Shown one piece after another: positions 8,532-60,401 of a DNA stretch of 64,000 nt. Within the stretch, counting starts at the first letter, position 1. The number at the start of each line of letters is the position of its first letter. The translations under genes and the position numbers were made by a program. The notes beneath the pieces are model-generated. The model searched no databases, was not told where the DNA came from, and saw only the letters and a list, made by a program, of their open reading frames with translations. The stretch spans positions 1 through 64,000 of the IMG/VR virus record IMGVR_UViG_3300010938_000951. The stretch is one strand, 5' to 3'.

Positions 8532-8822
8532 ATGAAAGTTTATTTATTAACAATATTTTTGTGTGCCTGCGCTACAGGGGTTTCCGATCCAATTGATGAT
8601 CCTGTAGTAGAAATTCCTGAGAATAAATCTGCTCCTAAACCAGCACCAACAACACCTTCTGCTTCTTCTTGTGAGGTAGATAGTTATTGGTCGGGTAATT
8701 GTTTTATTAAAAAGACTTATTGTTCTAATCAATTAGAACGAATTGATGTAATGTGTGATAGGGGCAGAAAGCTGTTTCCCTGGGAATATATTCCTGATCC
8801 TCCATTTGATGGTACAAAATAA
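8532..8822 (+). CDS. putative lipoprotein
   Basis: hydrophobic N-terminus with LCAC lipobox-like site, Pro-rich linker. Confidence 0.55.
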   Translation: MKVYLLTIFLCACATGVSDPIDDPVVEIPENKSAPKPAPTTPSASSCEVDSYWSGNCFIKKTYCSNQLERIDVMCDRGRKLFPWEYIPDPPFDGTK

Positions 8823-10441
8823 TGTCCTCAGAAGAAAACCTAATTCAAGTTCGCAAGGATAAGCATCAAGAAATTAATAGCGGCACTTATCCATTAGCCA
8901 GCGATCCGGCAACATTGCCATTTATCACTCATACTAATATTGAGCATGTTCGTCGTATGATTGATCTATTGCGAAATAATGGCAAGTTAGTTACTTCTGT
9001 ATCACCATCTGAATTGGGGGATACTGATAAGTACATCATCAGAGGCCGCATTGCGGCTTTGCGTAAGTCAGGAGCAATTACGTTCATTCGAGTGACTGAT
9101 GCTTCAGGGTCTATACAAGTTATTGTAAGTAAGTCGGCTTTTGATAGCTATGAAAAGCTCAAGCTGCTTGATCTAGGAGACATTGTAGAAATTGGTGGTC
9201 GCGCCTGCCAATCTAAGACTGGCGAAGATTCTTTGCTAGCTTTTACTGTGCGCGTTCTAACCAAGGCACATCGTCCACCACCTGAAAAGTTTGCAGGCAT
9301 TGCAGATCAAGAGCTTAAGTATCGTAAGAGATATCTTGATTTAATGTCTTCAGAAGAGAGTCGCGCTAGGTTTACTGTCCGCGCCTATGCTCTTCGAGCC
9401 ATTCGTGAATTTATGGAGTCTCATACTTTCCTAGAAGTAGAAACTCCTACGCTTGGCGCGATTGCAAGTGGTGCCAACGCTAAGCCATTCATTACGCATC
9501 ACAATGCTTTGGATATGGATATGCGATTGAGAATTGCTCCCGAGCTTTATCTCAAGAGGTTGCTTGTTGGTGGTCTTGATAGAGTGTACGAGATTGGTCG
9601 CAACTATCGTAATGAAGGTATTGATACACGCCACAATCCAGAATTCACTATGATGGAGAGTTATCAAGCATACGGAAATTTCCAACAGCTTGTTAATTTT
9701 GCAAAGCAACTACTACAACATGTAGTATCTTATCTATCTAATAATCTTCCTCCAAGTGCTGCTCCCTTCTATAAGCGGTGGTTGGATGAGGCCCCATATG
9801 AATTTTATCATTGCGTAGATATCAGTATGGAGCAGGCTGCTCTTAACGCTTTAGAGAAGATGGATATGAGAGCAGATGAAGAGTTTGCAATCATTGAATT
9901 CAATCATCTAAATGATGAGGCTCCACCAGAAGCAGTCAAGCGTCGTACAAGCGGAATCAATTGGGTTGCCTTTCACCATTTACTAGGTGAGTGTCAATCC
10001 CGTGGTGAAAGGGTTGCTCTTTGTTTTGAAACGTTTGCCGAACCATTCTTAGTAGATGATTATCGTAATGAATCTGGAAATAAGTCGGTTCCGGTATTCA
10101 TTACTGACTACCCAAAGGATATCTCTCCTTTGGCTAGGGCAAAAGATTCTGATCCATCGATTTGTGATCGATTTGAATTGTTTGTAGATGGTCGAGAATT
10201 GGCAAATGCATTTCAGGAACTAAACGATCCGGAAGAACAAGCTCTTCGTTTTCAGGAACAGTTGGATGCTAACAATAAGGATCCAATGGATTTTGATGCC
10301 GATTATGTAGAGGCATTGGAACATGGTATGCCACCTGCTATTGGATTTGGGATTGGCATTGATAGATTAGTGATGTTACTTACTAATACCACATCTATCA
10401 AGGATGTAATCCTATTTCCAACCTTACGACCGGAGAAGTAA
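8822..10441 (+). CDS. lysS: lysine--tRNA ligase (class II)
   Basis: OB anticodon domain, YRKRYLDL, LRIAPELYLKRL, RNEGID..HNPEFT, ELANAFQELNDP, GMPPAIGFGIGIDRL. Confidence 0.97.
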   Translation: MSSEENLIQVRKDKHQEINSGTYPLASDPATLPFITHTNIEHVRRMIDLLRNNGKLVTSVSPSELGDTDKYIIRGRIAALRKSGAITFIRVTDASGSIQVIVSKSAFDSYEKLKLLDLGDIVEIGGRACQSKTGEDSLLAFTVRVLTKAHRPPPEKFAGIADQELKYRKRYLDLMSSEESRARFTVRAYALRAIREFMESHTFLEVETPTLGAIASGANAKPFITHHNALDMDMRLRIAPELYLKRLLVGGLDRVYEIGRNYRNEGIDTRHNPEFTMMESYQAYGNFQQLVNFAKQLLQHVVSYLSNNLPPSAAPFYKRWLDEAPYEFYHCVDISMEQAALNALEKMDMRADEEFAIIEFNHLNDEAPPEAVKRRTSGINWVAFHHLLGECQSRGERVALCFETFAEPFLVDDYRNESGNKSVPVFITDYPKDISPLARAKDSDPSICDRFELFVDGRELANAFQELNDPEEQALRFQEQLDANNKDPMDFDADYVEALEHGMPPAIGFGIGIDRLVMLLTNTTSIKDVILFPTLRPEK

Positions 10442-11484: not shown

Positions 11485-11856
11485 ATGTATATTTACTATG
11501 TTTGGGTTACAGCTTTATTGCCTTCATACCAAGATGGATTAATTGCAGGATTAGTTCAACGTGGTTATATGGTAGGACCAGCAGCTAAAGACGGCAAAGT
11601 TTCAATGGCTGTTGAGGGTTGTCCGGCTGTATTGATTGCCCTTTCTGTTTACAAACAGGAAGAAGAAGTAGACGTTAAAAAAATCTACGAAGATGTTTTG
11701 GCGGTTCTTACAGAGATTCCCGCCAGATATTATTCTGTGGTGATTTCACTTTCTCACGAAGCAACATGGGTTGGTGCTAATTTTACCTTACCAGCTAAGA
11801 GTAAAAAAGAACCCCCACCTGTTCCTCCTGCCGGCAAAAAGACTAATATGAATTAA
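11485..11856 (+). CDS. hypothetical protein
   Basis: ORF in operon. Confidence 0.6.
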   Translation: MYIYYVWVTALLPSYQDGLIAGLVQRGYMVGPAAKDGKVSMAVEGCPAVLIALSVYKQEEEVDVKKIYEDVLAVLTEIPARYYSVVISLSHEATWVGANFTLPAKSKKEPPPVPPAGKKTNMN

Positions 11857-19217: not shown

Positions 19218-20402
19218 ATGAAGAAAATTGTCGCTATGTTAGTTGCTTTGGTAGCAACCTTGTTCACAGTGAATGCTTTAGCATTTACACCGCCTCCATC
19301 TCCTGCACCTGCAAGTTGGATCTCAGATAGTTCTCACGTACTTTCTGATGATGCTCACGCTCGATTAGATGCTAAATTAAGGCAGATTAATCAGAGTAGT
19401 GCTAATGAAATTGCAGCATTGATTATCCCATCTTTAGATGGTGAGGATATTGCCACTGTTGGAGACCTTACTGCTAAGGCATGGGGCGTTGGCAAGAAAG
19501 ACTTAGACAATGGAGTTCTAGTTGTTCTTGCTATGAAGGATCGTAAGTCACGCATCTCTACTGGTAAAGGTGTAGAGGGTGATCTTCCTGACCTAAAAGC
19601 CAATGATATTTTGGTAGCTGCCCGCCCTTATCTTCGTAAGGGTGATGTAGAAGGGGCACTTGGTTTTATCTTTGATAGTACCAGCAAAGCTATCGCCAAT
19701 CACAAAGCAGAGGTTGCAGCCGGAAAGTCTTCTGGTAGCTCAAGCCGTCCAGCATGTGATGTTTCAGGTGGTGTTGGAGCTGGTGATGGCACTGGTTGGG
19801 TACTAGTTTTAGTTGCTGGTGGTGCTATTGCTTTAGTTTGGTACCTTGCCGCTCAAGCAAAGCGTAGGCGCCAAGCTGAAGAAGCAGAACGTCAAGCTGC
19901 CAAACAAAGGTTAGAAGCTCGTAAACGACTGATTGAAGAGCGAGAAGCGGCCAGAAAACGAGATGAAGAACGACAGCGTAGAGAATCTCTAACTAAGAAA
20001 ACTCCAGTAGTAGATGTTCCAACTGTTCCTCGTCCAACTGTCCCGCGCCCCACACGTAAACCTGTAGAGCCTACTTCCCCAGTAGTGCCAGTAGGCGCAT
20101 CTGCTATTTCAGCCGCCGCATCTTTAGCCGCCGCTGAAGAGCAAACTCGTAGACAAAGAGCAGAAGCGGATCGTCGTAAGCGTGAACAAGAAGAAGAATC
20201 TCGACGAGCCCGAGAAAGAGCAGAAGAAGATCGTAGACGCCGAGAAAGAGACGAAGAAGACCGTCGTAGACGAGACTCTGAAAGCTCCTATAGTTCTAGC
20301 TCAAGTTCTAGTTGGTCTTCTGGTGGCTGGGATTCCGGCGGATCCTCTGGCGGATTCGGAGGCGGAGACTCAGGTGGTGGTGGATCATCTTCTGATTGGT
20401 GA
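19218..20402 (+). CDS. TPM domain protein (YgcG-like)
   Basis: signal peptide, WGVGKKDLDNGVL, STGKGVEGDLPD, TM helix, GGGDSGGGGSSSDW tail; beside lemA. Confidence 0.85.
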   Translation: MKKIVAMLVALVATLFTVNALAFTPPPSPAPASWISDSSHVLSDDAHARLDAKLRQINQSSANEIAALIIPSLDGEDIATVGDLTAKAWGVGKKDLDNGVLVVLAMKDRKSRISTGKGVEGDLPDLKANDILVAARPYLRKGDVEGALGFIFDSTSKAIANHKAEVAAGKSSGSSSRPACDVSGGVGAGDGTGWVLVLVAGGAIALVWYLAAQAKRRRQAEEAERQAAKQRLEARKRLIEEREAARKRDEERQRRESLTKKTPVVDVPTVPRPTVPRPTRKPVEPTSPVVPVGASAISAAASLAAAEEQTRRQRAEADRRKREQEEESRRARERAEEDRRRRERDEEDRRRRDSESSYSSSSSSSWSSGGWDSGGSSGGFGGGDSGGGGSSSDW

Positions 20403-41202: not shown

Positions 41203-41285
41203 GGGGGAGTAGCTCAGAGAAAGAGCGCAAGGAGTCCGTAAGGAAAACCTTGAGGTCCCAGGTTTAATTCCTGGCTCCCCCACCA
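41203..41285 (+). ncRNA. tRNA-like RNA with anticodon loop replaced by a GNRA hairpin
   Basis: GGGGGAG/CTCCCCC-ACCA; CAAGG[AG-TCC-GTAA-GGA-AAA]CCTTG. Confidence 0.75.
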
Positions 41286-41326: not shown

Positions 41327-41403
41327 GGGACAGTAGCTCAGTGTTAGAGCACCGGCCTTTAACTGCCGGGGGTCGCTGGTTCAACTCCATGCCTGTCCCA
41401 CCA
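41327..41403 (+). tRNA. atypical tRNA with 8-nt anticodon loop CTTTAACT (identity undetermined)
   Basis: GGGACAG/CTGTCCC-ACCA; bulged T stem. Confidence 0.65.
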
Positions 41404-41463
41404 AACCGAATGCAAGTAGGATTACATCGGATTAAAAATAATCTTACTAACCTTTCGTCGGTT
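41404..41463 (+). ncRNA. Y-like scaffold RNA 1 (no cargo)
   Basis: AACCGA/TCGGTT and AGTAGGATTA/TAATCTTACT stems; CCGAATG and GGATTACAT motifs. Confidence 0.7.
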
Positions 41464-41951: not shown

Positions 41952-42059
41952 TGACGAATGCCCGAAAGGGTTTACATTGTATGCGAAACAATCCGATGGA
42001 GTTCGATTCTCCTTTAAGGCTGGTGCCAGGTAAAACAACTCTTTCATTATTAGTCGTCA
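41952..42059 (+). ncRNA. Y-like scaffold RNA 2 (anticodon arm GCG plus T arm)
   Basis: TGACGA/TCGTCA, GAAAGGGTT/AACTCTTTC; ATTGT-ATGCGAA-ACAAT; GGAG-TTCGATT-CTCC. Confidence 0.75.
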
Positions 42060-42403: not shown

Positions 42404-42536
42404 TCAGCAAATGCCTGTAGGGATTACATTGCATTTGGAGCACGAGGAGAAGGTCCGATTCCTTCCGGCCCGACCATATCGGGACGAGGTGTTATGGCAG
42501 CACGCGTAAAAATAGTCTCTCAATTCTTGTTGCTGA
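42404..42536 (+). ncRNA. Y-like scaffold RNA 4 (circularly permuted Pro-type tRNA)
   Basis: TCAGCAA/TTGCTGA scaffold; order anticodon, T arm, CGGCCCG-ACCA, CGGGACG, D arm. Confidence 0.8.
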
Positions 42537-42987: not shown

Positions 42988-43342
42988 GGGGACTGATTAG
43001 ACTGGAATGATCCGTATTAGGTGTTGCGTTTGGTCAGTTCTGCGCAACGACAGGAGTTGTCACCGGAACTTTAACCCGGCCAATCTTCTGAGATGAATGC
43101 GGTAAGGACTACATTACTAATAGCGATCCGCAAGGACAACCCACTCCTTTACAGTACACAAGAGCGGTAGAAAATGCAAACTGAGTACCTGACAAACTTG
43201 ATAACCAGTAAAGCTTCAAGTGTAGGCGGTGAACTACTAAAATTTGCTGCGGACCTTATCGATATCCATAACAGGACTCTTTAAGCAAACCCGCTGTCTT
43301 TACTACCTCTTGTATTGAAATACAAGTTCTTGTCATCAATCT
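42988..43342 (+). ncRNA. unknown ~350-nt structured RNA
   Basis: no ORF; long-range pairings GACAGGAGTTGT/ACAAGTTCTTGTC and ACAAGAG(C)GGTAG/CTACCTCTTGT. Confidence 0.5.
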
Positions 43343-43344
43343 AT

Positions 43345-43419
43345 TCCGCTCTAGTGTAATTAGCACGACGATCCTTTTTCGGGTCGGGGGTCATGGTTCG
43401 AGTCCATGGGGCGGAGCCA
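43345..43419 (+). tRNA. atypical tRNA (T-rich anticodon loop, identity undetermined)
   Basis: TCCGCTC/GGGCGGA-GCCA; arm CGATC-CTTTTTCG-GGTCG. Confidence 0.65.
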
Positions 43420-44291: not shown

Positions 44292-44362
44292 AGCCAAATG
44301 CCTTGATAGGATTACATTGAACTGTTAATTCAAACCTATATCTTATCTAATTTTTGTTGGCT
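44292..44362 (+). ncRNA. Y-like scaffold RNA 5 (isolated Asn anticodon stem-loop)
   Basis: AGCCAA/TTGGCT, GATAGGAT/ATCTTATC; cargo TTGAA-CTGTTAA-TTCAA. Confidence 0.8.
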
Positions 44363-44448: not shown

Positions 44449-44525
44449 GGCACGGTAGTCCAAAGGCAGGAGACACCTGACTTAAAATCAGTTCAGTGTG
44501 GGTTCGAATCCCACCCGTGCTACCA
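44449..44525 (+). tRNA. tRNA-Leu(TAA), short variable loop
   Basis: loop CTTAAAA, CCA. Confidence 0.85.
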
Positions 44526-44557
44526 AATGATAATCTTGCGCAAGATTATCAGATAAA

Positions 44558-44702
44558 GACAGAATGCCCCGAAGGAATACATAGAACAGCAATTGAATGA
44601 AAATCAATAGATTGTAGGTGCGAATCCTACCTCTCCCACCAATAATAAGATATATGGGAGGGAAGCTAAATAAAACAAACTTCTTTCAAATCTTTGTCTG
44701 TC
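44558..44702 (+). ncRNA. Y-like scaffold RNA 6 (circularly permuted tRNA-Phe)
   Basis: GACAGA/TCTGTC; ATTGA-ATGAAAA-TCAAT, T arm, CTCTCCC-ACCA, linker, GGGAGGG. Confidence 0.8.
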
Positions 44703-44705
44703 AAT

Positions 44706-44781
44706 GGAGCTTGAGCAAGTGTGGTCATTGCATCGGTCTGAAAAGCCGACAAATCCGGTTCGATCCCGGAAGGCTCCACCA
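44706..44781 (+). tRNA. tRNA-Phe(GAA)
   Basis: loop CTGAAAA, CCA. Confidence 0.85.
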
Positions 44782-44790
44782 ACTACCAAT

Positions 44791-44865
44791 GGTCCTGTAG
44801 CTCAGTGGTAGAGCGCTTGCCTGAAGAGCAGGGCGTCGGGGGTTCAATTCCCTCCGGGACCACCA
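44791..44865 (+). tRNA. tRNA-Phe(GAA)
   Basis: loop CTGAAGA, CCA. Confidence 0.92.
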
Positions 44866-45520: not shown

Positions 45521-45660
45521 TGAAACAAATGCTCGCAGAGGATTACATCGCATATCCAGCGGGTTACGTGAGTGCGAATCTCACTCTCAGCTCATTATGC
45601 TGAGATCGTCTAGCAGTCTAGGACACCTAAAAAATAGTCTTCTCAATTCTTGTTGTTTCA
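45521..45660 (+). ncRNA. Y-like scaffold RNA 7 (circularly permuted Gly-type tRNA)
   Basis: TGAAACAA/TTGTTTCA; CGC-ATATCCA-GCG, T arm, TCTCAGC/GCTGAGA, D arm. Confidence 0.8.
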
Positions 45661-45667
45661 CAATTAT

Positions 45668-45863
45668 GCCTCCTATCATGGCTGGAAACTGATAGCGATA
45701 CCACCAGGCGGTCCCAGAGGGATGCAGCAGGGGAAGTACAAGAGTATCAAACAGAAGGGACGCCTTCTAGCCTGCTCACATGGTTGGAAACTGTGACGCG
45801 GTCTTGGTCGCGATAGACCAAGTAGTAAAACCGCAAGCCTGCCCACATGGTCGGAAACTGTGG
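45668..45863 (+). repeat. three copies of a hairpin with conserved core CATGGYYGGAAACTG
   Basis: copies at 45668, 45770 and 45837 with co-varying stems. Confidence 0.75.
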
Positions 45864-45945: not shown

Positions 45946-46097
45946 GAAGCAAATGCCCCGAAGGTTTACATTTGAGAAACTGTATTATCGCAAGATAGTC
46001 GTGGGTTCGAATCCCACATCACCGCAAGGTGATTGGCTGAGTGGTCTAAAGCGACAGTGCCGCAAGGCATGCTAACTTTCAAATTTTTTGTTGCTTC
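45946..46097 (+). ncRNA. Y-like scaffold RNA 8 (YrlA-like, permuted class II tRNA)
   Basis: GAAGCAA/TTGCTTC; variable arm, GTGGG-TTCGAAT-CCCAC, acceptor ATCACC-GCAA-GGTGAT, D arm. Confidence 0.85.
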
Positions 46098-47086: not shown

Positions 47087-47674
47087 ATGAATAAAATTCA
47101 AAGATTGCAAATGAGGGGCGTGAGGCTCACGTCCGAGGCAGACTGGGAGAAAGTTATAATTTCCCCTGAAGAGGTAGAAGAAGGCATTAGGCTCGGTACG
47201 CTGCAAGAGATGGAGTCCGCAAAACTGGGATTAAAAGATCGATCATTCTCCGGAGATGAAGGAGATTCGTTAGCAAGGTCAATCGCAGCCAAACAGTTCG
47301 AATTTGCAATTAGACGATGGGGTGGTGGTACTGCTCGCATTGTGCAAATTAATGAGTTCCATGACTTCCCGGACGTTGGGAAAGTGAATGCTCGATATAC
47401 ATTCAACACTGGTTACGGGATGATTATTACCAACCGTGATCAGGGTAAAGTACCAATGATCTTGGGAACGGGTAAATGTCCTGAGTTTTATTTAATGGGA
47501 TGGTTTATTCCAGATTATGCAAAACAAATTATTTTTAAAGTCCACCAAAAACGCAATGAAGATTGTGAAACCGATTTTGGTTTCTTGCAGGAAATGAAAG
47601 ACCACGAATGTTGTCAGCTTAATATGCAAATGCTTTTTCCTATGTGGTCTTTCAATAAAGAACTACTAAAATGA
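47087..47674 (+). CDS. hypothetical protein
   Basis: AAGGTGG RBS before ATG. Confidence 0.65.
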   Translation: MNKIQRLQMRGVRLTSEADWEKVIISPEEVEEGIRLGTLQEMESAKLGLKDRSFSGDEGDSLARSIAAKQFEFAIRRWGGGTARIVQINEFHDFPDVGKVNARYTFNTGYGMIITNRDQGKVPMILGTGKCPEFYLMGWFIPDYAKQIIFKVHQKRNEDCETDFGFLQEMKDHECCQLNMQMLFPMWSFNKELLK

Positions 47675-53137: not shown

Positions 53138-53297
53138 GCAACAAATGCCAGCTAGGATTACATAGCTCGCAACTATTTTCCCCGCCAGCCCGAGAGGGCA
53201 AATAAACTTTTATTTTTTATGTTACTAACACGGGGAAATGTTCAAGTCGGTCTGAAAAACCGATAAGGAACTCTTCTTGGCACCTTTAGTTGTTGCT
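53137..53297 (+). ncRNA. Y-like scaffold RNA 9 (two anticodon-like stem-loops)
   Basis: AGCAACAA/TTGTTGCT, GGATTACAT; ATAG-CTCGCAA-CTAT and TCGGT-CTGAAAA-ACCGA. Confidence 0.7.
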
Positions 53298-53303
53298 AAA
53301 TAT

Positions 53304-53404
53304 AGCAGATTGGAGCAGCGGTAGCTCGCCAGGTTCACAATGGGGCTGATGCCCTATAAGGATACCCTGGAGGTCGTGTGGTTCGATTCCCTCATCTGCA
53401 ACCA
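53304..53404 (+). tRNA. initiator-type tRNA-Met with 25-nt insert in the anticodon
   Basis: 1:72 mismatch, TGGAGCAG..GGTAGCTCG D arm; CCAGG-TTCA[25 nt]TAC-CCTGG. Confidence 0.8.
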
Positions 53405-57830: not shown

Positions 57831-58169
57831 GTGAAAGTTATGAGCTTACCTTGGTCACGAGATATGCAATTAGATCCTGGCACATTTGGAGGGTCTCCAG
57901 CATGTCATGTATTAGTTGATATGATGAACAAAAATGTGATTCCTGTTCAGGAAAAACATCGAGTTCTATCATTCATTAGCGGTACTATTTTGCATTTCAA
58001 GGCCATCTCTGCCATCAAAGAAAGAGGTATAAGGGCACGGGTTATGGTGCTTTTGAAAAATGATCTGTTTTCCAGAATAGATCAAATGCCATATCCAGCT
58101 CATTTCAACTCTTATCTGAAGAACGTAGTAAATCACCACTTCAGGCGATACTTAAAAGAAGTAGTCTAG
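57831..58169 (+). CDS. hypothetical protein
   Basis: ORF whose end overlaps RNase P helix P1. Confidence 0.5.
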   Translation: MKVMSLPWSRDMQLDPGTFGGSPACHVLVDMMNKNVIPVQEKHRVLSFISGTILHFKAISAIKERGIRARVMVLLKNDLFSRIDQMPYPAHFNSYLKNVVNHHFRRYLKEVV

Positions 58170-58488
58170 ACAATCGCTCTGCAAGGAGAGGAAAGTCGGA
58201 GCTACATAGGACAGTCTGCTGGCTAACGGCCAGGCGTAGTAATACGACGGAAAGTGCAACAGAAAATAAACCGCCCGCAAGGGTAAGGGTGAAATGGTGA
58301 GGTAAGAGCTTACCGCATGTTTGGCGACAAATATGGCAAGGCAAACCCCAGATGTAGCAAGCTAAACAGAGAGTGACTTGTCCGGTCAATACTCTCGGGT
58401 TAGTGCTGGAGCCGTCAAGTAATTGTCGGCCAAGATTAATGATTGTCTCGATTTATAGACAGAACTCCGCTTATAGGGCTACTTCTTT
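58155..58488 (+). ncRNA. rnpB: RNase P RNA (bacterial type A)
   Basis: P1 AAGAAGTAGTC/GGCTACTTCTT; GAGGAAAGTCGGAGC, GGAAAGTGCAACAGAAA, GGGTGAAA..GGTAAGAGC, GGCAAACCCC, ACAGAACTCCGCTTA with compensatory P4. Confidence 0.95.
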
Positions 58489-58510
58489 TAAGTTCTTTTA
58501 AGGAATTATT

Positions 58511-59040: not shown

Positions 59041-59733
59041 ATGGCAGATAAAGTTACCACCGTTAGCGCAAAAGGTTGCGTTGTAACAGATTTTGATACG
59101 GCTACATTTGCACTCTCATTTAATGAGTTTGCTCCTAAAGCCAAAGACGCAAAGCTGAAGCTAAAGAAAGGTGCAGCTAAGATTACAGCGGCCCTTGATG
59201 ATCTCAAGAAACGTGGGTTGGAGTTTTTAACCAACAACTATCGCACTAATATTACAGTGCAACCAAATTATGTTTATGACCGTTCGTCCGGCCAAAACAG
59301 AATGGAAGGACAGAAGGCAACTTACTCTGTAACGTTCCAAACTCCTACACTAGAAATGGTTAGTGAAGCATACGATCTACTTTCTGAATTGGAAGTGAAT
59401 GAACTTTCAATTAATTCTCCTGCTTATTCTGTCAGGTCCGAAGCGCAATTTAAGCAACAAGCATTGGAAGATGCTTGGAAGGTAGCTCAAGTTTTGTTTG
59501 CTAATCAGTGCAAGGTTCTTGGGTTTGATGAAACTAAATTCTCTGTTGATAGCTGGCAGGTTAATTATAGTGGCCATGACCATGGTGGATTTGCTAAGGG
59601 TCGTAGCTATTCAAACTCTGTGCTAGCGGCATCAGCTTCGGCTGATTATGGTGATGAAGCCATTGAACTAAATGCTGGCCGTGCTATCATTGAAGTAGTT
59701 CTGACTGTCGATTACGTTCGTACCGGATCATGA
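59041..59733 (+). CDS. SIMPL (DUF541) domain protein
   Basis: VTTVSAKG...D.A, ITVQPNY.Y, QQALEDA pattern. Confidence 0.7.
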   Translation: MADKVTTVSAKGCVVTDFDTATFALSFNEFAPKAKDAKLKLKKGAAKITAALDDLKKRGLEFLTNNYRTNITVQPNYVYDRSSGQNRMEGQKATYSVTFQTPTLEMVSEAYDLLSELEVNELSINSPAYSVRSEAQFKQQALEDAWKVAQVLFANQCKVLGFDETKFSVDSWQVNYSGHDHGGFAKGRSYSNSVLAASASADYGDEAIELNAGRAIIEVVLTVDYVRTGS

Positions 59734-60401
59734 AAATTAAGCTAGCCTATCCTAAAATTCCTGATACTTTAGACTGTCCACTCAAGCAATGTATTGCTTT
59801 TGAAAAATTGGATGGAACTAATTTGCATTGGGTTTGGAATAGGGAAAAAGGCTGGCATGCTTTTGGTACTCGCCGAGATAGATTTAATCTAGATGAACAA
59901 GGAATTGCTTCTTTCAACCAAGCACATCCCGGACTGGAGGAAGCAATTTCCTTGTTTAGAAAATCGTATGAGCATCTCGCTGAGTATCCACTTAAACATA
60001 AATATGGTCCAATATCAGAATCCACGGGTGACGTAATTCTATTTACAGAGTTCCTTGGAGATAAATCTTTTGCTGGTTCTCACCAAAAAGGCGACCCCAA
60101 AAGATTAGTATTATTTGATGTAATGACTGATAAAGGAATAACTCCACCAGATCAGTTTGTGATTGATTTTGGACAGTTTGATGATATTCCGGGATATTAT
60201 ATTCCACAAATTGTTTTTAGTGGAAAGTTTTCAGGACAATTATTTGTAGATGTTAGGAAAAACAAGTTCAAAGTAAACGAGGGCGTGGTTGTCAAAGGTA
60301 TGTTTGCCGGGCAAGTTTACATGGCCAAGATTAAGACGACTGACTATTTAGAGCGCCTAAAGAAAGAATTTAAAAACGATTGGAAAAATTATTGGGAATG
60401 A
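59730..60401 (+). CDS. RNA ligase (Rnl2-like adenylyltransferase domain)
   Basis: YPKI, EKLDGTN, TEFLG, LFDV, EGVVVK, AKIKT. Confidence 0.85.
   Translation: MKIKLAYPKIPDTLDCPLKQCIAFEKLDGTNLHWVWNREKGWHAFGTRRDRFNLDEQGIASFNQAHPGLEEAISLFRKSYEHLAEYPLKHKYGPISESTGDVILFTEFLGDKSFAGSHQKGDPKRLVLFDVMTDKGITPPDQFVIDFGQFDDIPGYYIPQIVFSGKFSGQLFVDVRKNKFKVNEGVVVKGMFAGQVYMAKIKTTDYLERLKKEFKNDWKNYWE

What the first reader, a model, noticed from the sequence alone, without database searches (positions are those of the whole stretch)
44558..44702. Permuted tRNA-Phe opened in the D-loop, directly upstream of two normal tRNA-Phe genes
Seen: AGC-A, ATTGA-ATGAAAA-TCAAT, T arm GTAGG-TGCGAAT-CCTAC, CTCTCCC-ACCA, a 14-nt AT-rich linker, then GGGAGGG-AA-GCT. 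The scaffold enters at the D-loop, a different breakpoint from the Pro and Gly elements. Inference: the scaffold repeatedly captures pieces of tandem tRNA genes (3' part of one, spacer, 5' part of the next). Cutting the linker alone would expose a chargeable CCA end tethered to Ro60.
Basis: partly seen in the sequence, partly recalled or inferred. Interest (0 to 1): 0.75.

Follow-up and report, generated by a model that had tools for sequence, protein, structure and literature searches.

The report
Phage Y RNA carrying permuted tRNA
This 145-base stretch is one of about nine small Ro60-type "Y RNA" genes scattered among the tRNA genes of a giant phage; unusually, its tip is a rearranged, nearly complete tRNA with a Phe anticodon and a built-in CCA end, a new layout for a known kind of tRNA-mimicking RNA.

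Summary
A structural descriptor for a D-opened permuted tRNA hits the 267-kb genome once, at 44588-44667, and hits none of 40 shuffled genomes.

The "scaffold" is the Ro60-binding module of YrlA-class Y RNAs. It has a 6-bp terminal stem, 5' AUGC.. and 3' ..CUUUG single strands, and a second 7-bp helix, as in the Rfam YrlA consensus. A Ro60 gene (TROVE plus vWA_Ro60) lies 9.4 kb upstream on the same strand. In distant relatives the same scaffold sits within about 0.05-1.5 kb of Ro60.

The tip of the element is a circularly permuted tRNA-like four-way junction with canonical tRNA spacing:
- a 7-bp acceptor stem with an encoded ACCA;
- a 14-nt linker that resembles a tRNA 5' leader;
- a T arm and an anticodon arm (GAA);
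- a 3-bp helix in place of the D arm, which leads into the Ro60 stem.

Orthologues in three other contigs keep all helices, with 4 compensatory pairs. One orthologue has GAU instead of GAA, and some relatives lack the element.

Most likely it is a Y RNA released by tRNA-processing enzymes and probably nicked by RNase P at the linker, as shown for M. smegmatis YrlA. Aminoacylation and capture from the neighbouring tRNA-Phe genes are not supported. I rate it a new variant of a known kind.

The parts
44558..44563 (+). Terminal stem S1, 5' strand (GACAGA). It pairs with 44697-44702.
   Evidence: MFE fold. Six pairs are kept in the orthologues. S1 covaries across 34 minimal scaffolds.
44564..44570 (+). 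5' single-stranded AUGCCCC. It corresponds to the conserved 'AUGCu' of the Rfam YrlA consensus, the putative Ro60 contact strand.
   Evidence: YrlA consensus shown. AATGC is invariant in 34 minimal scaffolds.
44571..44577 (+). Helix S2, 5' strand (GAAGGAA). It pairs with 44681-44687.
   Evidence: Across 113 unique scaffolds the own-partner helix averages 7.5 bp, against 5.5 bp for swapped partners.
44578..44587 (+). 5' junction strand UACAUAGAAC. It contains the family's conserved UACAU.
44588..44590 (+). AGC, the 3' strand of a 3-bp D-stem equivalent (tRNA positions 23-25). It pairs with GCU at 44665-44667.
44592..44608 (+). Anticodon-arm equivalent: a 5-bp stem and the 7-nt loop AUGAAAA, with GAA at 44599-44601.
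   Evidence: One pair shows G-C to A-U compensation. Orthologue loops read CUGAAAA and CUGAUAA.
44609..44613 (+). 5-nt variable-loop equivalent (AGAUU).
   Evidence: Read. The spacing is that of a class I tRNA.
44614..44630 (+). T-arm equivalent: GUAGG-UGCGAAU-CCUAC.
   Evidence: One pair is compensated in L005.
44631..44641 (+). Acceptor 3' strand CUCUCCC, then discriminator A and the encoded CCA.
   Evidence: ACCA is kept in all four orthologues.
44642..44655 (+). 14-nt AU-rich linker that closes the acceptor stem. It resembles the 5' leaders of the phage's tRNAs and ends UAU before G+1.
44656..44667 (+). Acceptor 5' strand GGGAGGG, then AA (positions 8-9), then GCU (D-stem 5' strand).
   Evidence: In run X27, G1-C72 becomes A1-U72.
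44668..44680 (+). 3' junction strand (13 nt, A-rich).
44681..44687 (+). Helix S2, 3' strand (UUCUUUC).
44688..44696 (+). 3' single-stranded AAAUCUUUG. It corresponds to 'aAaAcUuG' of the Rfam YrlA consensus.
   Evidence: One search compared.
44697..44702 (+). Terminal stem S1, 3' strand (UCUGUC). Only 3 nt (AAU) separate it from the next tRNA.
33529..35115 (+). Ro60 homologue gene, the presumed protein partner.
   Evidence: Pfam vWA_Ro60 scores 55.4 bits and TROVE 39.7 bits, both above their cut-offs.
44449..44525 (+). Upstream tRNA-Leu(UAA). Its 3' processing would define the 5' side of the precursor.
44706..44865 (+). Two tRNA-Phe(GAA) genes. RNase P cleavage at 44706 would free the 3' end of the element.
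   Evidence: 47.5 and 67.5 bits.
58158..58489 (+). Phage-encoded RNase P RNA (class A), a candidate processing enzyme for the array and for the linker.
   Evidence: 279.9 bits, full length.
41404..41463 (+). Sister Y RNA scaffold E1, minimal, with no tRNA-like insert.
41952..42059 (+). Sister scaffold E2. It has an ASL-like hairpin (AUGCGAA), a T arm and a closed acceptor-like stem. The scaffold again sits in the D position.
42405..42535 (+). Sister scaffold E3. It has a T arm, an acceptor stem with ACCA-UAU, and a D arm.
43092..43343 (+). Sister scaffold E4, which carries a long insert.
   Evidence: Read by eye. The script did not confirm it.
44292..44362 (+). Sister scaffold E5, capped only by an ASL-like hairpin (CUGUUAA).
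45523..45658 (+). Sister scaffold E7. It has the same UGCGAAU T loop, and its acceptor stem is closed by UCAUUAU.
45947..46096 (+). Sister scaffold E8, with the canonical YrlA tRNA-like domain.
   Evidence: Rfam YrlA local match, 26.3 bits, E 6e-4 in the 171-nt search.
53139..53295 (+). Sister scaffold E9. It carries a copy of the anticodon arm of tRNA-Phe 44706-44781.

Best explanation
Window 44558-44702 is a gene for a YrlA-class Y RNA, the small RNA partner of the ring protein Ro60. It belongs to a jumbo phage. It is one of nine such genes in the window, and at least eleven in the 267-kb record, interleaved with tRNA genes.

Shown by sequence and comparison:
- Its two ends form the Ro60-binding module. 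This is a 6-bp stem, conserved single strands 5' AUGC.. and 3' ..CUUUG, and a 7-bp second helix.
- Its tip is a four-way junction that is a circular permutation of a tRNA. The junction has a 7-bp acceptor stem whose 3' strand runs into an encoded ACCA. It is closed by a 14-nt linker that looks like a tRNA 5' leader.
- It also has a T arm, a 5-nt variable loop and an anticodon arm with GAA. A 3-bp 'D stem' opens into the Ro60 module instead of a D loop.

Inferred:
- The RNA is cut out of the tRNA polycistron by the tRNA-processing enzymes. RNase P acting at the next tRNA, 3 nt downstream, makes its 3' end.
- RNase P, host or the phage's own, also cuts between U44655 and G44656. The linker is then trimmed back to CCA. 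The result is a nicked two-piece RNA held together by 23 base pairs. This is what was shown experimentally for M. smegmatis YrlA.
- Bound to Ro60, the tRNA-shaped tip then serves as a tether or decoy for a tRNA-recognising factor. That factor could be a processing or modifying enzyme, a synthetase, or a host anticodon nuclease.
- It is not a decoding tRNA.
For: Scaffold equals the YrlA module. The Rfam YrlA consensus is a 6-bp stem, AUGCu, a 7-bp helix, then the 7-bp helix's partner, aAaAcUuG and the 6-bp stem's partner. The element has GACAGA, AUGCCCC, GAAGGAA, then UUCUUUC, AAAUCUUUG and UCUGUC.

Ro60 link:
- A Ro60 gene lies 9.4 kb upstream on the same strand.
- In relatives with 43-55% Ro60 identity the same scaffold lies about 0.05-1.5 kb from the Ro60 ORF. 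Examples are L133, L135, L144, L161, L121 and L138.
- None of 63 loci of unrelated phages that share only the neighbouring cupin gene has the scaffold. All four close relatives do.

Structure is real:
- The MFE fold gives all six helices, z = -3.19.
- Of the cells in four orthologues, 99.2% pair. Four pairs have compensatory changes, in the anticodon stem, the T stem and two in the acceptor stem. Pairing drops to 39-51% when partners are slid by 1-3 columns.
- RNAalifold finds the anticodon arm, T arm, acceptor stem and terminal stem on its own.
- A further G1-C72 to A1-U72 change is seen in contigs of runs X27 and X25.
- The descriptor is unique in the genome and absent from 40 shuffles.

tRNA-likeness. 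The de-permuted RNA, with a D loop borrowed from the neighbouring tRNA-Phe, is called tRNA-Phe(gaa) over its full length. This happens at 90% of ARAGORN's threshold. None of 300 shuffles is called.

Processing:
- All 65 tRNAs of the genome encode CCA, and nearly all have AU at -2/-1.
- The linkers of this and sister elements end ..UAU before G+1.
- RNase P RNA is encoded at 58158-58489.
- Two CCA-adding/poly(A)-polymerase family ORFs are present.
- M. smegmatis YrlA is cut by RNase P in the acceptor loop and carries CCA in vivo (PMC4201824, read).
Against: - No expression or end-mapping data exist. The only RNA-library evidence is an 890-nt contig from a relative in a soil metatranscriptome, and that could come from contaminating DNA.
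- Ro60 binding is not shown. The complex predictor gave no verdict for protein-RNA pairs.
- Rfam YrlA does not reach its gathering score anywhere in the window. The best score is 26.3 bits against 69, and there is no hit on this element.
- The 'D stem' is only 3 bp and is followed by a 10 x 13 nt internal loop, so the junction may be floppy.
- The element is dispensable. It is absent from the syntenic Leu-Phe junction in L013/L090 and in a contig of X45. It is truncated by an HNH gene in L005.
- The anticodon is GAU in L088, so a Phe-specific role is not conserved.
Confidence: 0.72

Rival explanations
1. A decaying by-product of recombination inside the tRNA array. On this view a Y RNA scaffold fused to tRNA fragments, is transcribed only passively, and has no function of its own.
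For: There is presence/absence polymorphism among close relatives, and the L005 copy is truncated by an HNH gene. The anticodon drifts from GAA to GAU. The T loop and position 8 are non-canonical. Acceptor stems of sister elements turn over fast between phages whose Ro60 proteins are 87% identical. Compare 45523 in the window with L003 21446.
Against: Five compensatory pair changes occur across lineages, and no helix is broken. ACCA and the leader-like end of the linker are kept in all four copies. The permuted module even survives in L005, where the scaffold's 3' half is gone.
Confidence: 0.12
2. A structured spacer of the tRNA polycistron, unrelated to Ro60. It would serve as a processing or insulating stem that guides RNase P, RNase E or RNase III, and would only resemble YrlA.
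For: Every copy is wedged within 0-12 nt of flanking tRNA genes. No copy reaches the Rfam YrlA threshold. Ro60 binding is untested.
Against: The single-stranded letters match the YrlA consensus (AUGC....CUUG). The scaffold co-occurs with Ro60 genes and lies directly beside Ro60 in distant relatives. It is absent from phages that have tRNA arrays and the cupin gene.
Confidence: 0.08
3. A true permuted tRNA-Phe gene of the Cyanidioschyzon type. Its transcript would be circularised or religated and then opened to give a working, chargeable tRNA. The phage encodes several RNA ligases.
For: The 3' half lies upstream of the 5' half with a linker, CCA is encoded, and A73 and GAA are present. The genome has 3-4 RNA-ligase family ORFs.
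Against: There is no sequence that could become a D loop with G18/G19. The ends form a YrlA stem, not a bulge-helix-bulge. The T loop has G55. The phage already has two ordinary tRNA-Phe genes 3 nt downstream. One orthologue reads GAU. Rfam tRNA scores below threshold.
Confidence: 0.03

Closest known systems
YrlA Y RNAs (Rfam RF02553; Chen et al. 2014, PMC4201824), especially M. smegmatis YrlA
   Same: - Both are encoded on the Ro60 strand.
- The termini form the Ro60-binding stem with AUGC../..CUUG single strands.
- The tip is a tRNA-like four-way junction with a T arm and a closed acceptor stem.
- In M. smegmatis the 7-bp acceptor stem is cut by RNase P and ends in CCA.
   Different: - In YrlA the Ro60 stem takes the anticodon-arm position and a D arm is present. 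Here it takes the D-arm position and a full anticodon arm is present.
- Here CCA is encoded rather than added.
- The acceptor loop is an 18-nt ACCA plus a leader-like linker.
- The gene lies 9.4 kb from Ro60 inside a tRNA array, not within 4 kb of Ro60.
- The Rfam gathering score is not reached.
D. radiodurans Yrn1 (as modelled in PMC4201824)
   Same: It is a Y RNA whose tRNA-like part has a different permutation from YrlA. It includes an 'anticodon arm' with a 5-bp stem.
   Different: Yrn1 has a 6-nt loop and no acceptor stem with CCA. Its Ro60 stem takes the acceptor position.
Two-piece (circularly permuted) tmRNA genes of alpha-proteobacteria and cyanobacteria (from my own knowledge; Keiler, Shapiro and Williams 2000)
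   Same: The gene order is T arm, acceptor 3' strand, CCA, an intervening segment, then the acceptor 5' strand. The intervening segment is excised to leave a nicked tRNA-like domain.
   Different: This element has no tag reading frame and no pseudoknots, and it does have an anticodon arm. ARAGORN calls no tmRNA here.
Permuted tRNA genes of Cyanidioschyzon merolae and other algae (from my own knowledge; Soma et al. 2007)
   Same: The 3' half of the tRNA is encoded upstream of the 5' half and joined to it by a short linker.
   Different: Those genes mature through a bulge-helix-bulge, circularisation and RNase P/Z cleavage into complete tRNAs. This element has no D loop, and its ends are a Ro60-binding stem.
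Phage Y RNA-like RNAs (mycobacteriophages, CcrColossus, phage G; Thermus phage phiLo Yrl1/2, PMC12135203)
   Same: They are phage-encoded Ro60 with one or two Y RNA-like genes and a CGAA-type motif.
   Different: Those are one or two RNAs directly beside Ro60. Here nine to eleven are dispersed through a tRNA array, with varied tRNA-derived tips.

Membership tests
YrlA-class Y RNA | Encoded near a Ro60 (TROVE) gene on the same strand. | tested here: met
   Ro60 lies at 33529-35115 on the + strand. The element lies 9.4 kb downstream on the + strand. This is farther than the 4 kb criterion used by Chen et al. 2014.
YrlA-class Y RNA | 5' and 3' ends pair into the Ro60-binding module: a terminal stem, conserved AUGC.. 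and ..CUUG strands, and a second helix. | tested here: met
   Consensus compared. S2 covaries across 113 scaffolds. S1 and part of S2 are found by RNAalifold on 34 minimal copies.
YrlA-class Y RNA | Reaches the Rfam RF02553 gathering score (69 bits). | tested here: not met
   No YrlA match covers 44558-44702. The best match in the window is 26.3 bits, at 45996-46053.
YrlA-class Y RNA | tRNA-like domain made of a T arm, a closed acceptor stem and a D arm, with the Ro60 stem in the anticodon position. | tested here: not met
   The T arm and closed acceptor stem are present. The D arm is replaced by the Ro60 stem, and an anticodon arm is present. The parts are the same but the permutation differs.
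YrlA-class Y RNA | Bound by Ro60. | not testable with these tools
   Complex prediction returned no verdict for a protein-RNA pair.
tRNA (RF00005) | Passes tRNA gene finders as a contiguous cloverleaf. | tested here: not met
   ARAGORN makes no call in 44526-44705. Rfam tRNA scores 23.6 bits, below 29, over 44571-44638 only.
tRNA (RF00005) | All four arms with canonical spacing once de-permuted. | tested here: inconclusive
   The spacings 2/1/5/0 are canonical. With a borrowed D loop, ARAGORN calls tRNA-Phe only at 90% of its threshold; the L088 copy is called at 95% and the L005 copy at 85%. None of 300 shuffles is called. The locus has no D loop of its own.
Permuted tRNA gene (C. merolae type) | 3' half upstream of the 5' half, joined by a linker. 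| tested here: met
Permuted tRNA gene (C. merolae type) | Precursor ends form a bulge-helix-bulge so that a complete tRNA results. | tested here: not met
   The ends form S1, a 7x9-nt internal loop and S2. No D-loop sequence is present.
Two-piece (permuted) tmRNA | Tag-peptide reading frame and pseudoknots beside the permuted tRNA-like domain. | tested here: not met
   ARAGORN, which detects permuted tmRNA, finds none. At 145 nt the element has no room for them.

The most novel reading that the evidence does not exclude
The phage carries a modular set of Ro60-tethered tRNA and anticodon-stem-loop mimics. Their loops read GAA twice in the window (this element and E9), plus GCG (E2) and GUU (E5), and GAU and others in relatives. 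Each would be matched to a particular tRNA identity.

This member, after an RNase P nick, would be a Ro60-bound, CCA-ended and possibly aminoacylated tRNA-Phe look-alike. The set would work in one of two ways. It could act as decoys that draw host anticodon nucleases or other tRNA-targeting defences onto a Ro60/exonuclease particle. Alternatively it could recruit synthetases or repair enzymes for quality control of the phage's own tRNAs.
Probability: 0.15. Interest if true: 0.85.

Novelty: new variant of a known kind. Interest (0 to 1): 0.62.

Why it matters
Y RNAs are known to mimic tRNA, but what the mimicry is for remains open. This phage clade offers a natural series of Ro60 scaffolds: bare, capped by an anticodon stem-loop only, carrying the canonical YrlA domain, or, as here, carrying an almost whole tRNA. 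In this element the tRNA is permuted so that the anticodon arm and a CCA end are displayed while the D arm is given up to the Ro60 stem.

Three consequences follow:
- The tRNA-like tip is exchangeable and evolves by the same duplication and permutation route as tRNA genes.
- The RNase P/CCA maturation seen once, in M. smegmatis, may be hard-wired in a whole clade. Here the CCA and the leader-like linker are encoded.
- The design yields concrete testable substrates for asking which tRNA-binding factor Ro60 particles recruit during infection.

The clade also shows that Y RNA genes can sit many kilobases from Ro60 inside tRNA arrays. Standard searches miss them there, or discard them as 'tandem tRNA' artefacts.

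Tried and rejected
- Megablast of 40-50 kb of the window against GenBank phages found no match.
- An exact pattern for the anticodon-to-T-arm region found only the two known relatives in IMG/VR.
- A looser structural pattern returned ten unrelated coding sequences.
- A pattern scan of the JGI metagenome contigs found nothing.
- Ro60 plus RNA complex prediction gave no verdict and is not used as evidence.
- ARAGORN at default thresholds on the de-permuted RNA found nothing. It was called only at a lowered threshold.
- A search for a donor tRNA among 424 tRNAs found nothing beyond generic T-arm similarity. Derivation from the adjacent tRNA-Phe genes is therefore rejected.
- A small CC..GG hairpin in the 5' strand was considered. 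It is rejected in favour of the longer S2 helix, which covaries.
- A promoter inside the linker was considered. The sigma-70 scan shows none there, and promoter-like sites in the array are no more frequent than chance.
- The nearest cultured phage by Ro60 is Myxococcus phage Mx1, at 52% identity. No scaffold or YrlA match was found within 9 kb of its Ro60, so no laboratory model was identified.
- RtcB is absent from the genome record, which is 62% complete.
- RNA-library runs hold mostly the conserved flanking tRNAs. Only one relative's contig spans the element.
Full report
OBSERVATION.
- AGC (44588-44590) and A;
- ATTGA-ATGAAAA-TCAAT (44592-44608);
- AGATT;
- GTAGG-TGCGAAT-CCTAC (44614-44630);
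- CTCTCCC-ACCA (44631-44641);
- a 14-nt linker ATAATAAGATATAT (44642-44655);
- GGGAGGG-AA-GCT (44656-44667).

The outer coordinates of the finding, 44558 and 44702, are the two ends of a 6-bp terminal stem (GACAGA/TCTGTC). Two tRNA-Phe(GAA) genes follow 3 nt later, at 44706-44781 and 44791-44865.

Unconstrained folding of 44526-44705 gives all six helices as the minimum-energy structure. These are the terminal stem, a second 7-bp helix, the 3-bp AGC/GCU helix, the anticodon-like arm, the T-like arm and the 7-bp acceptor stem. The z-score is -3.19, and none of 200 shuffles folds as well.

I wrote a sequence-blind structural descriptor of a tRNA opened in the D loop. It matches the 266,899-base genome on both strands exactly once, at 44588-44667. 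It matches none of 40 locally shuffled genomes.

WHAT THE SCAFFOLD IS. The same frame recurs nine times in the window, at 41404, 41952, 42405, 43092, 44292, 44558, 45523, 45947 and 53139. All copies lie between tRNA genes. At least two more lie beside tRNA-Gly genes at 79.7-80.0 kb of the same record.

The frame consists of:
- a 6-bp terminal stem that differs in sequence from copy to copy;
- an invariant AAUGC;
- a helix of the type AAGGNNU/ANNCUU, which also covaries;
- UACAU;
- on the 3' side, ..UCAAUUCUUG before the terminal stem.

The Rfam YrlA consensus, displayed by a weak hit, has the same plan and the same single-stranded letters. It reads 6-bp stem, AUGCu, 7-bp helix, CUA, then the 7-bp helix's partner, aAaAcUuG and the 6-bp stem's partner. 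For this element the corresponding strings are GACAGA, AUGCCCC, GAAGGAA, UAC.., then UUCUUUC, AAAUCUUUG and UCUGUC.

One sister copy (45947-46096) also carries the canonical YrlA tRNA-like domain of T arm, closed acceptor stem and D arm. It gives a local Rfam YrlA match of 26.3 bits, E = 6e-4 in the 171-nt search.

Across 113 distinct scaffolds from this phage and its relatives, the longest helix between a copy's own 5' and 3' parts averages 7.5 bp. Swapped partners average 5.5 bp. RNAalifold on 34 minimal copies of 56-71 nt recovers the terminal stem and part of the second helix with many compensatory changes. One caveat applies: pairing of the terminal stem was one of my detection criteria.

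RO60 LINK. ORF 33424-35115 (likely start 33529) matches Pfam vWA_Ro60 at 55.4 bits and TROVE at 39.7 bits, both above their cut-offs. It is on the same strand, 9.4 kb upstream.

Searching with Ro60 brought in 7 viral and 80 metagenomic loci. My script found 137 complete scaffolds in 46 of them plus the window. At least one script hit is false: 47378-47586 lies inside an ORF.

In the distant relatives (Ro60 identity 43-55%) the scaffolds lie about 0.05-1.5 kb from the Ro60 ORF. Examples:
- L133 at 11564, with Ro60 ending at 11491;
- L135 at 11615, with Ro60 ending at 11563;
- L144 at 11605, with Ro60 ending at 11572;
- L161 at 11608, with Ro60 ending at 11572;
- L121 and L138.

This is the arrangement Chen et al. 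2014 used to define YrlA (PMC4201824). By contrast, 63 loci of unrelated phages that share only the neighbouring cupin gene have no scaffold. The four close relatives in that search all do.

I therefore take the scaffold to be the Ro60-binding module of a YrlA-class Y RNA. Actual binding is not shown, because the complex predictor gives no verdict for protein-RNA pairs.

THE tRNA-LIKE TIP. Going round the four-way junction, the order is acceptor, 3-bp helix, 5-bp/7-nt hairpin, T arm, acceptor. The connectors are 2 nt (AA), 1 nt (A), 5 nt (AGAUU) and 0 nt. These are exactly positions 8-9, 26 and 44-48 and the direct T-to-acceptor stack of a class I tRNA.

The hairpin occupies the anticodon position, with U33, G34, A35, A36, A37 and A38.

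Several departures from a real tRNA are clear:
- there is no D loop;
- the T loop is UGCGAAU, with G at position 55;
- position 8 is A;
- the D stem has 3 bp and is followed by a 10 x 13 nt internal loop.

Rfam's tRNA model scores only 23.6 bits (gathering score 29) on 44571-44638, and ARAGORN calls nothing there. I de-permuted the RNA in silico and gave it the D loop of the neighbouring tRNA-Phe. ARAGORN then calls tRNA-Phe(gaa) over the full length, but only when its threshold is lowered to 90%. The L088 orthologue is called tRNA-Ile(gat) at 95% and the L005 orthologue at 85%. None of 300 shuffles is called at these settings. It is a close tRNA mimic, not a tRNA.

ORTHOLOGUES.
- The same element sits at the same place, between tRNA-Leu(UAA) and tRNA-Phe, in IMG/VR contig 3300043177_000122. 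There it is L003 20373-20517, with one difference.
- It also sits there in metagenome contig JACCDR012422029.1, as L088 18919-19062.
- A third copy, in L005, keeps the 5' scaffold and the whole permuted module. An HNH endonuclease ORF stands where the 3' scaffold should be.

On the four-sequence alignment, 99.2% of cells pair, and four pairs change on both sides. These are one pair in the anticodon stem, one in the T stem and two in the acceptor stem. A G-U to A-U change is also seen. Sliding the partners by 1-3 columns drops pairing to 39-51%. RNAalifold predicts the three arms and the terminal stem by itself.

Contigs of public runs add more:
- X18 holds a near-identical copy.
- X27, a soil metatranscriptome, holds an 890-nt contig at depth 47.7, and X25 has similar contigs. 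Here the 5' scaffold is a different version of the same motif. G1-C72 has become A1-U72 (44656 G>A with 44637 C>T), and position 8 is U.
- X45 holds a relative in which the whole element is replaced by a 20-nt AU-rich spacer, as in L013/L090.

So the structure is under selection where the element is present, but the element is accessory.

The anticodon loop is AUGAAAA or CUGAAAA in three lineages and CUGAUAA (GAU) in L088. U33, G34, A35, A37 and A38 are conserved, but Phe identity is not.

CCA, LINKER AND PROCESSING. All 65 tRNA genes of this genome encode CCA. Nearly all are preceded by AU, usually as UAU, AAU or CAU. In relatives, the spacers before tRNA 5' ends read ..AAAGAUAUA..AU|G.

The linker here (AUAAUAAGAUAUAU|G) and those of the orthologues (AUAAAAAGACAUAU|G and UAAAAAGAUUUAU|G) have the same character. 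Many sister elements in this clade close their acceptor stem with ACCA plus a linker ending UAU. These include 42405 in the window, L088 16532, L097 19349, L005 16209, L108 and L121. More distant relatives use short loops such as GAAA, UAC or UUU.

A 7-bp acceptor stem stacked on a T arm, U at -1, G+1-C72 and a 3' ACCA are the classical determinants of bacterial RNase P (established knowledge). Chen et al. showed that M. smegmatis YrlA, the one YrlA with a 7-bp acceptor stem, is cut there by RNase P. They saw this in vitro and in vivo, and the cut RNA then carries CCA.

The phage itself encodes a full-length class A RNase P RNA at 58158-58489 and two CCA-adding/poly(A)-polymerase family ORFs. 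The Y RNAs are packed 0-12 nt from the flanking tRNAs. The tRNA 3'-end machinery upstream and RNase P downstream would therefore also release the Y RNA ends.

I infer, but have not shown, that the mature form is nicked at 44655/44656 and trimmed to ..ACCA. It would be held together by the 7+3+7+6 base pairs that join the two pieces.

ORIGIN. This fits the CCA-leader junction. It also fits the remark of Chen et al. that tandem tRNAs score as false YrlA hits. I saw the same on the tandem tRNA-Asn pair.

Two points count against capture from neighbours. The acceptor strands pair perfectly, which needs both parts to come from one tRNA, that is, a tandem duplicate followed by truncation. And no donor is detectable: the best local alignment of the 54-nt 3' part to any of 424 tRNAs is 24, which is generic T-arm similarity. 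The module is also unlike the two tRNA-Phe genes next to it.

By contrast, sister element 53139-53295 carries a hairpin that is 16/17 identical to the anticodon arm of tRNA-Phe 44706-44781. Exchange between tRNA genes and scaffolds therefore does happen in this genome.

FUNCTION. What the tip is for is inference. Anticodon-stem-loop-like hairpins (5 bp, 7-nt loop, U33, purine 37) occur in 24 of 113 scaffolds, against 6 expected from shuffles with a maximum of 12. In the window the loops read GAA twice (this element and E9), GCG (E2) and GUU (E5).

The phage is rich in tRNA and RNA-repair functions:
- 65 tRNAs;
- a class II aminoacyl-tRNA synthetase at 8822-10441;
- RNase P RNA;
- RNA ligases;
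- CCA-adding family enzymes.

RtcB was not found in the record, which is 62% complete.

The most economical reading follows the established Y RNA model, in which the RNA acts as a tether and gate for Ro60 (PMC4201824, PMC12135203). The tRNA-shaped tip would bring a tRNA-recognising factor to Ro60, or would soak one up. A decoy role against host anticodon nucleases is attractive but untested. Aminoacylation is unlikely. The D loop, which carries synthetase identity elements in bacterial tRNA-Phe (my own knowledge), is missing, and the anticodon is not conserved.

COMPARISON AND NOVELTY. The element works like, and by its scaffold belongs with, YrlA-class Y RNAs. It fails two formal tests for that family: the Rfam gathering score and the canonical arm order.

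The published tRNA-like Y RNA layouts put the Ro60 stem in the anticodon position (YrlA) or the acceptor position (Yrn1). This one puts it in the D position and so displays both an anticodon arm and an encoded CCA end. Sister element 41952-42059 and its L008 orthologue share this D-position layout with a GCG loop.

I found no paper describing Y RNA genes dispersed through phage tRNA arrays, or this permutation (searches; papers read). The library is not complete, though. I rate it a new variant of a known kind.

Noticed in passing
window 58158-58489: A full-length bacterial class A RNase P RNA (279.9 bits) is encoded inside the phage record, a few kb from the tRNA/Y RNA array.
   Followed up: partly
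window 53139-53295 (hairpin at 53247-53263): This sister Y RNA scaffold carries the hairpin TCGGT-CTGAAAA-ACCGA. It is 16/17 identical to the anticodon arm of the phage's own tRNA-Phe at 44706-44781. It is a second GAA loop displayed on a Ro60 scaffold.
   Followed up: partly
window 44292-44362: This scaffold's tip is only an anticodon-stem-loop look-alike (TTGAA-CTGTTAA-TTCAA, GUU). Such hairpins are about four times enriched in the scaffold family over shuffles (24 of 113 against 6).
   Followed up: partly
window 41327-41403 and 43345-43419: ARAGORN calls two tRNAs with 8-nt anticodon loops (ttaa and tttt). They could be frameshift-type or otherwise unusual decoders.
   Followed up: no
window 41203-41282 and 53304-53401: Rfam calls tRNAs of 80 and 98 nt (52.4 and 39.8 bits) that ARAGORN does not call. 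They seem to carry insertions around the anticodon or variable region.
   Followed up: no
window 44528-44551: A perfect 10-bp hairpin (GATAATCTTG/CAAGATTATC) lies between tRNA-Leu and the element. It is absent in L088, where the element starts directly after the tRNA's CCA.
   Followed up: no
window 45667-45862: Three copies of a 27-nt motif (..GCCTGCYCACATGGTYGGAAACTGTG) lie in the spacer between scaffold 45523-45658 and tRNA-Thr. Its function is unknown, and the region's fold is not better than shuffles (z = -1.05).
   Followed up: partly
L005 about 20055-20284: An HNH endonuclease ORF occupies the place of the 3' half of the orthologous scaffold. The permuted tRNA-like module upstream remains intact, with compensatory changes.
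   Followed up: partly
genome record G000:C1 79688-79814 and 79893-80022 (outside the window): Two further Y RNA-type scaffolds are wedged between tRNA-Gly genes. The record therefore holds at least eleven.
   Followed up: partly
genome record G000:C1 176544-176617 and 176628-176700 (outside the window): Two tRNAs with anticodon CTA, which would read amber codons. All 65 tRNAs in the record encode CCA, and nearly all have AT at -2/-1.
   Followed up: no
window 8822-10441; 59730-60401: A class II (Asp/Lys/Asn-type) aminoacyl-tRNA synthetase gene and an RNA-ligase family gene lie in the window. The record also has two PolyA_pol/CCA-adding family ORFs and no RtcB.
   Followed up: partly
window 45523-45658 versus L003 21446-21580: These orthologous scaffolds have identical T arms but completely different acceptor stems (TCTCAGC/GCTGAGA closed by TCATTAT versus ATTCGGC/GCCGAAT closed by ACCATAT). 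The Ro60 proteins of the two phages are 87% identical. This suggests cassette-like replacement.
   Followed up: no
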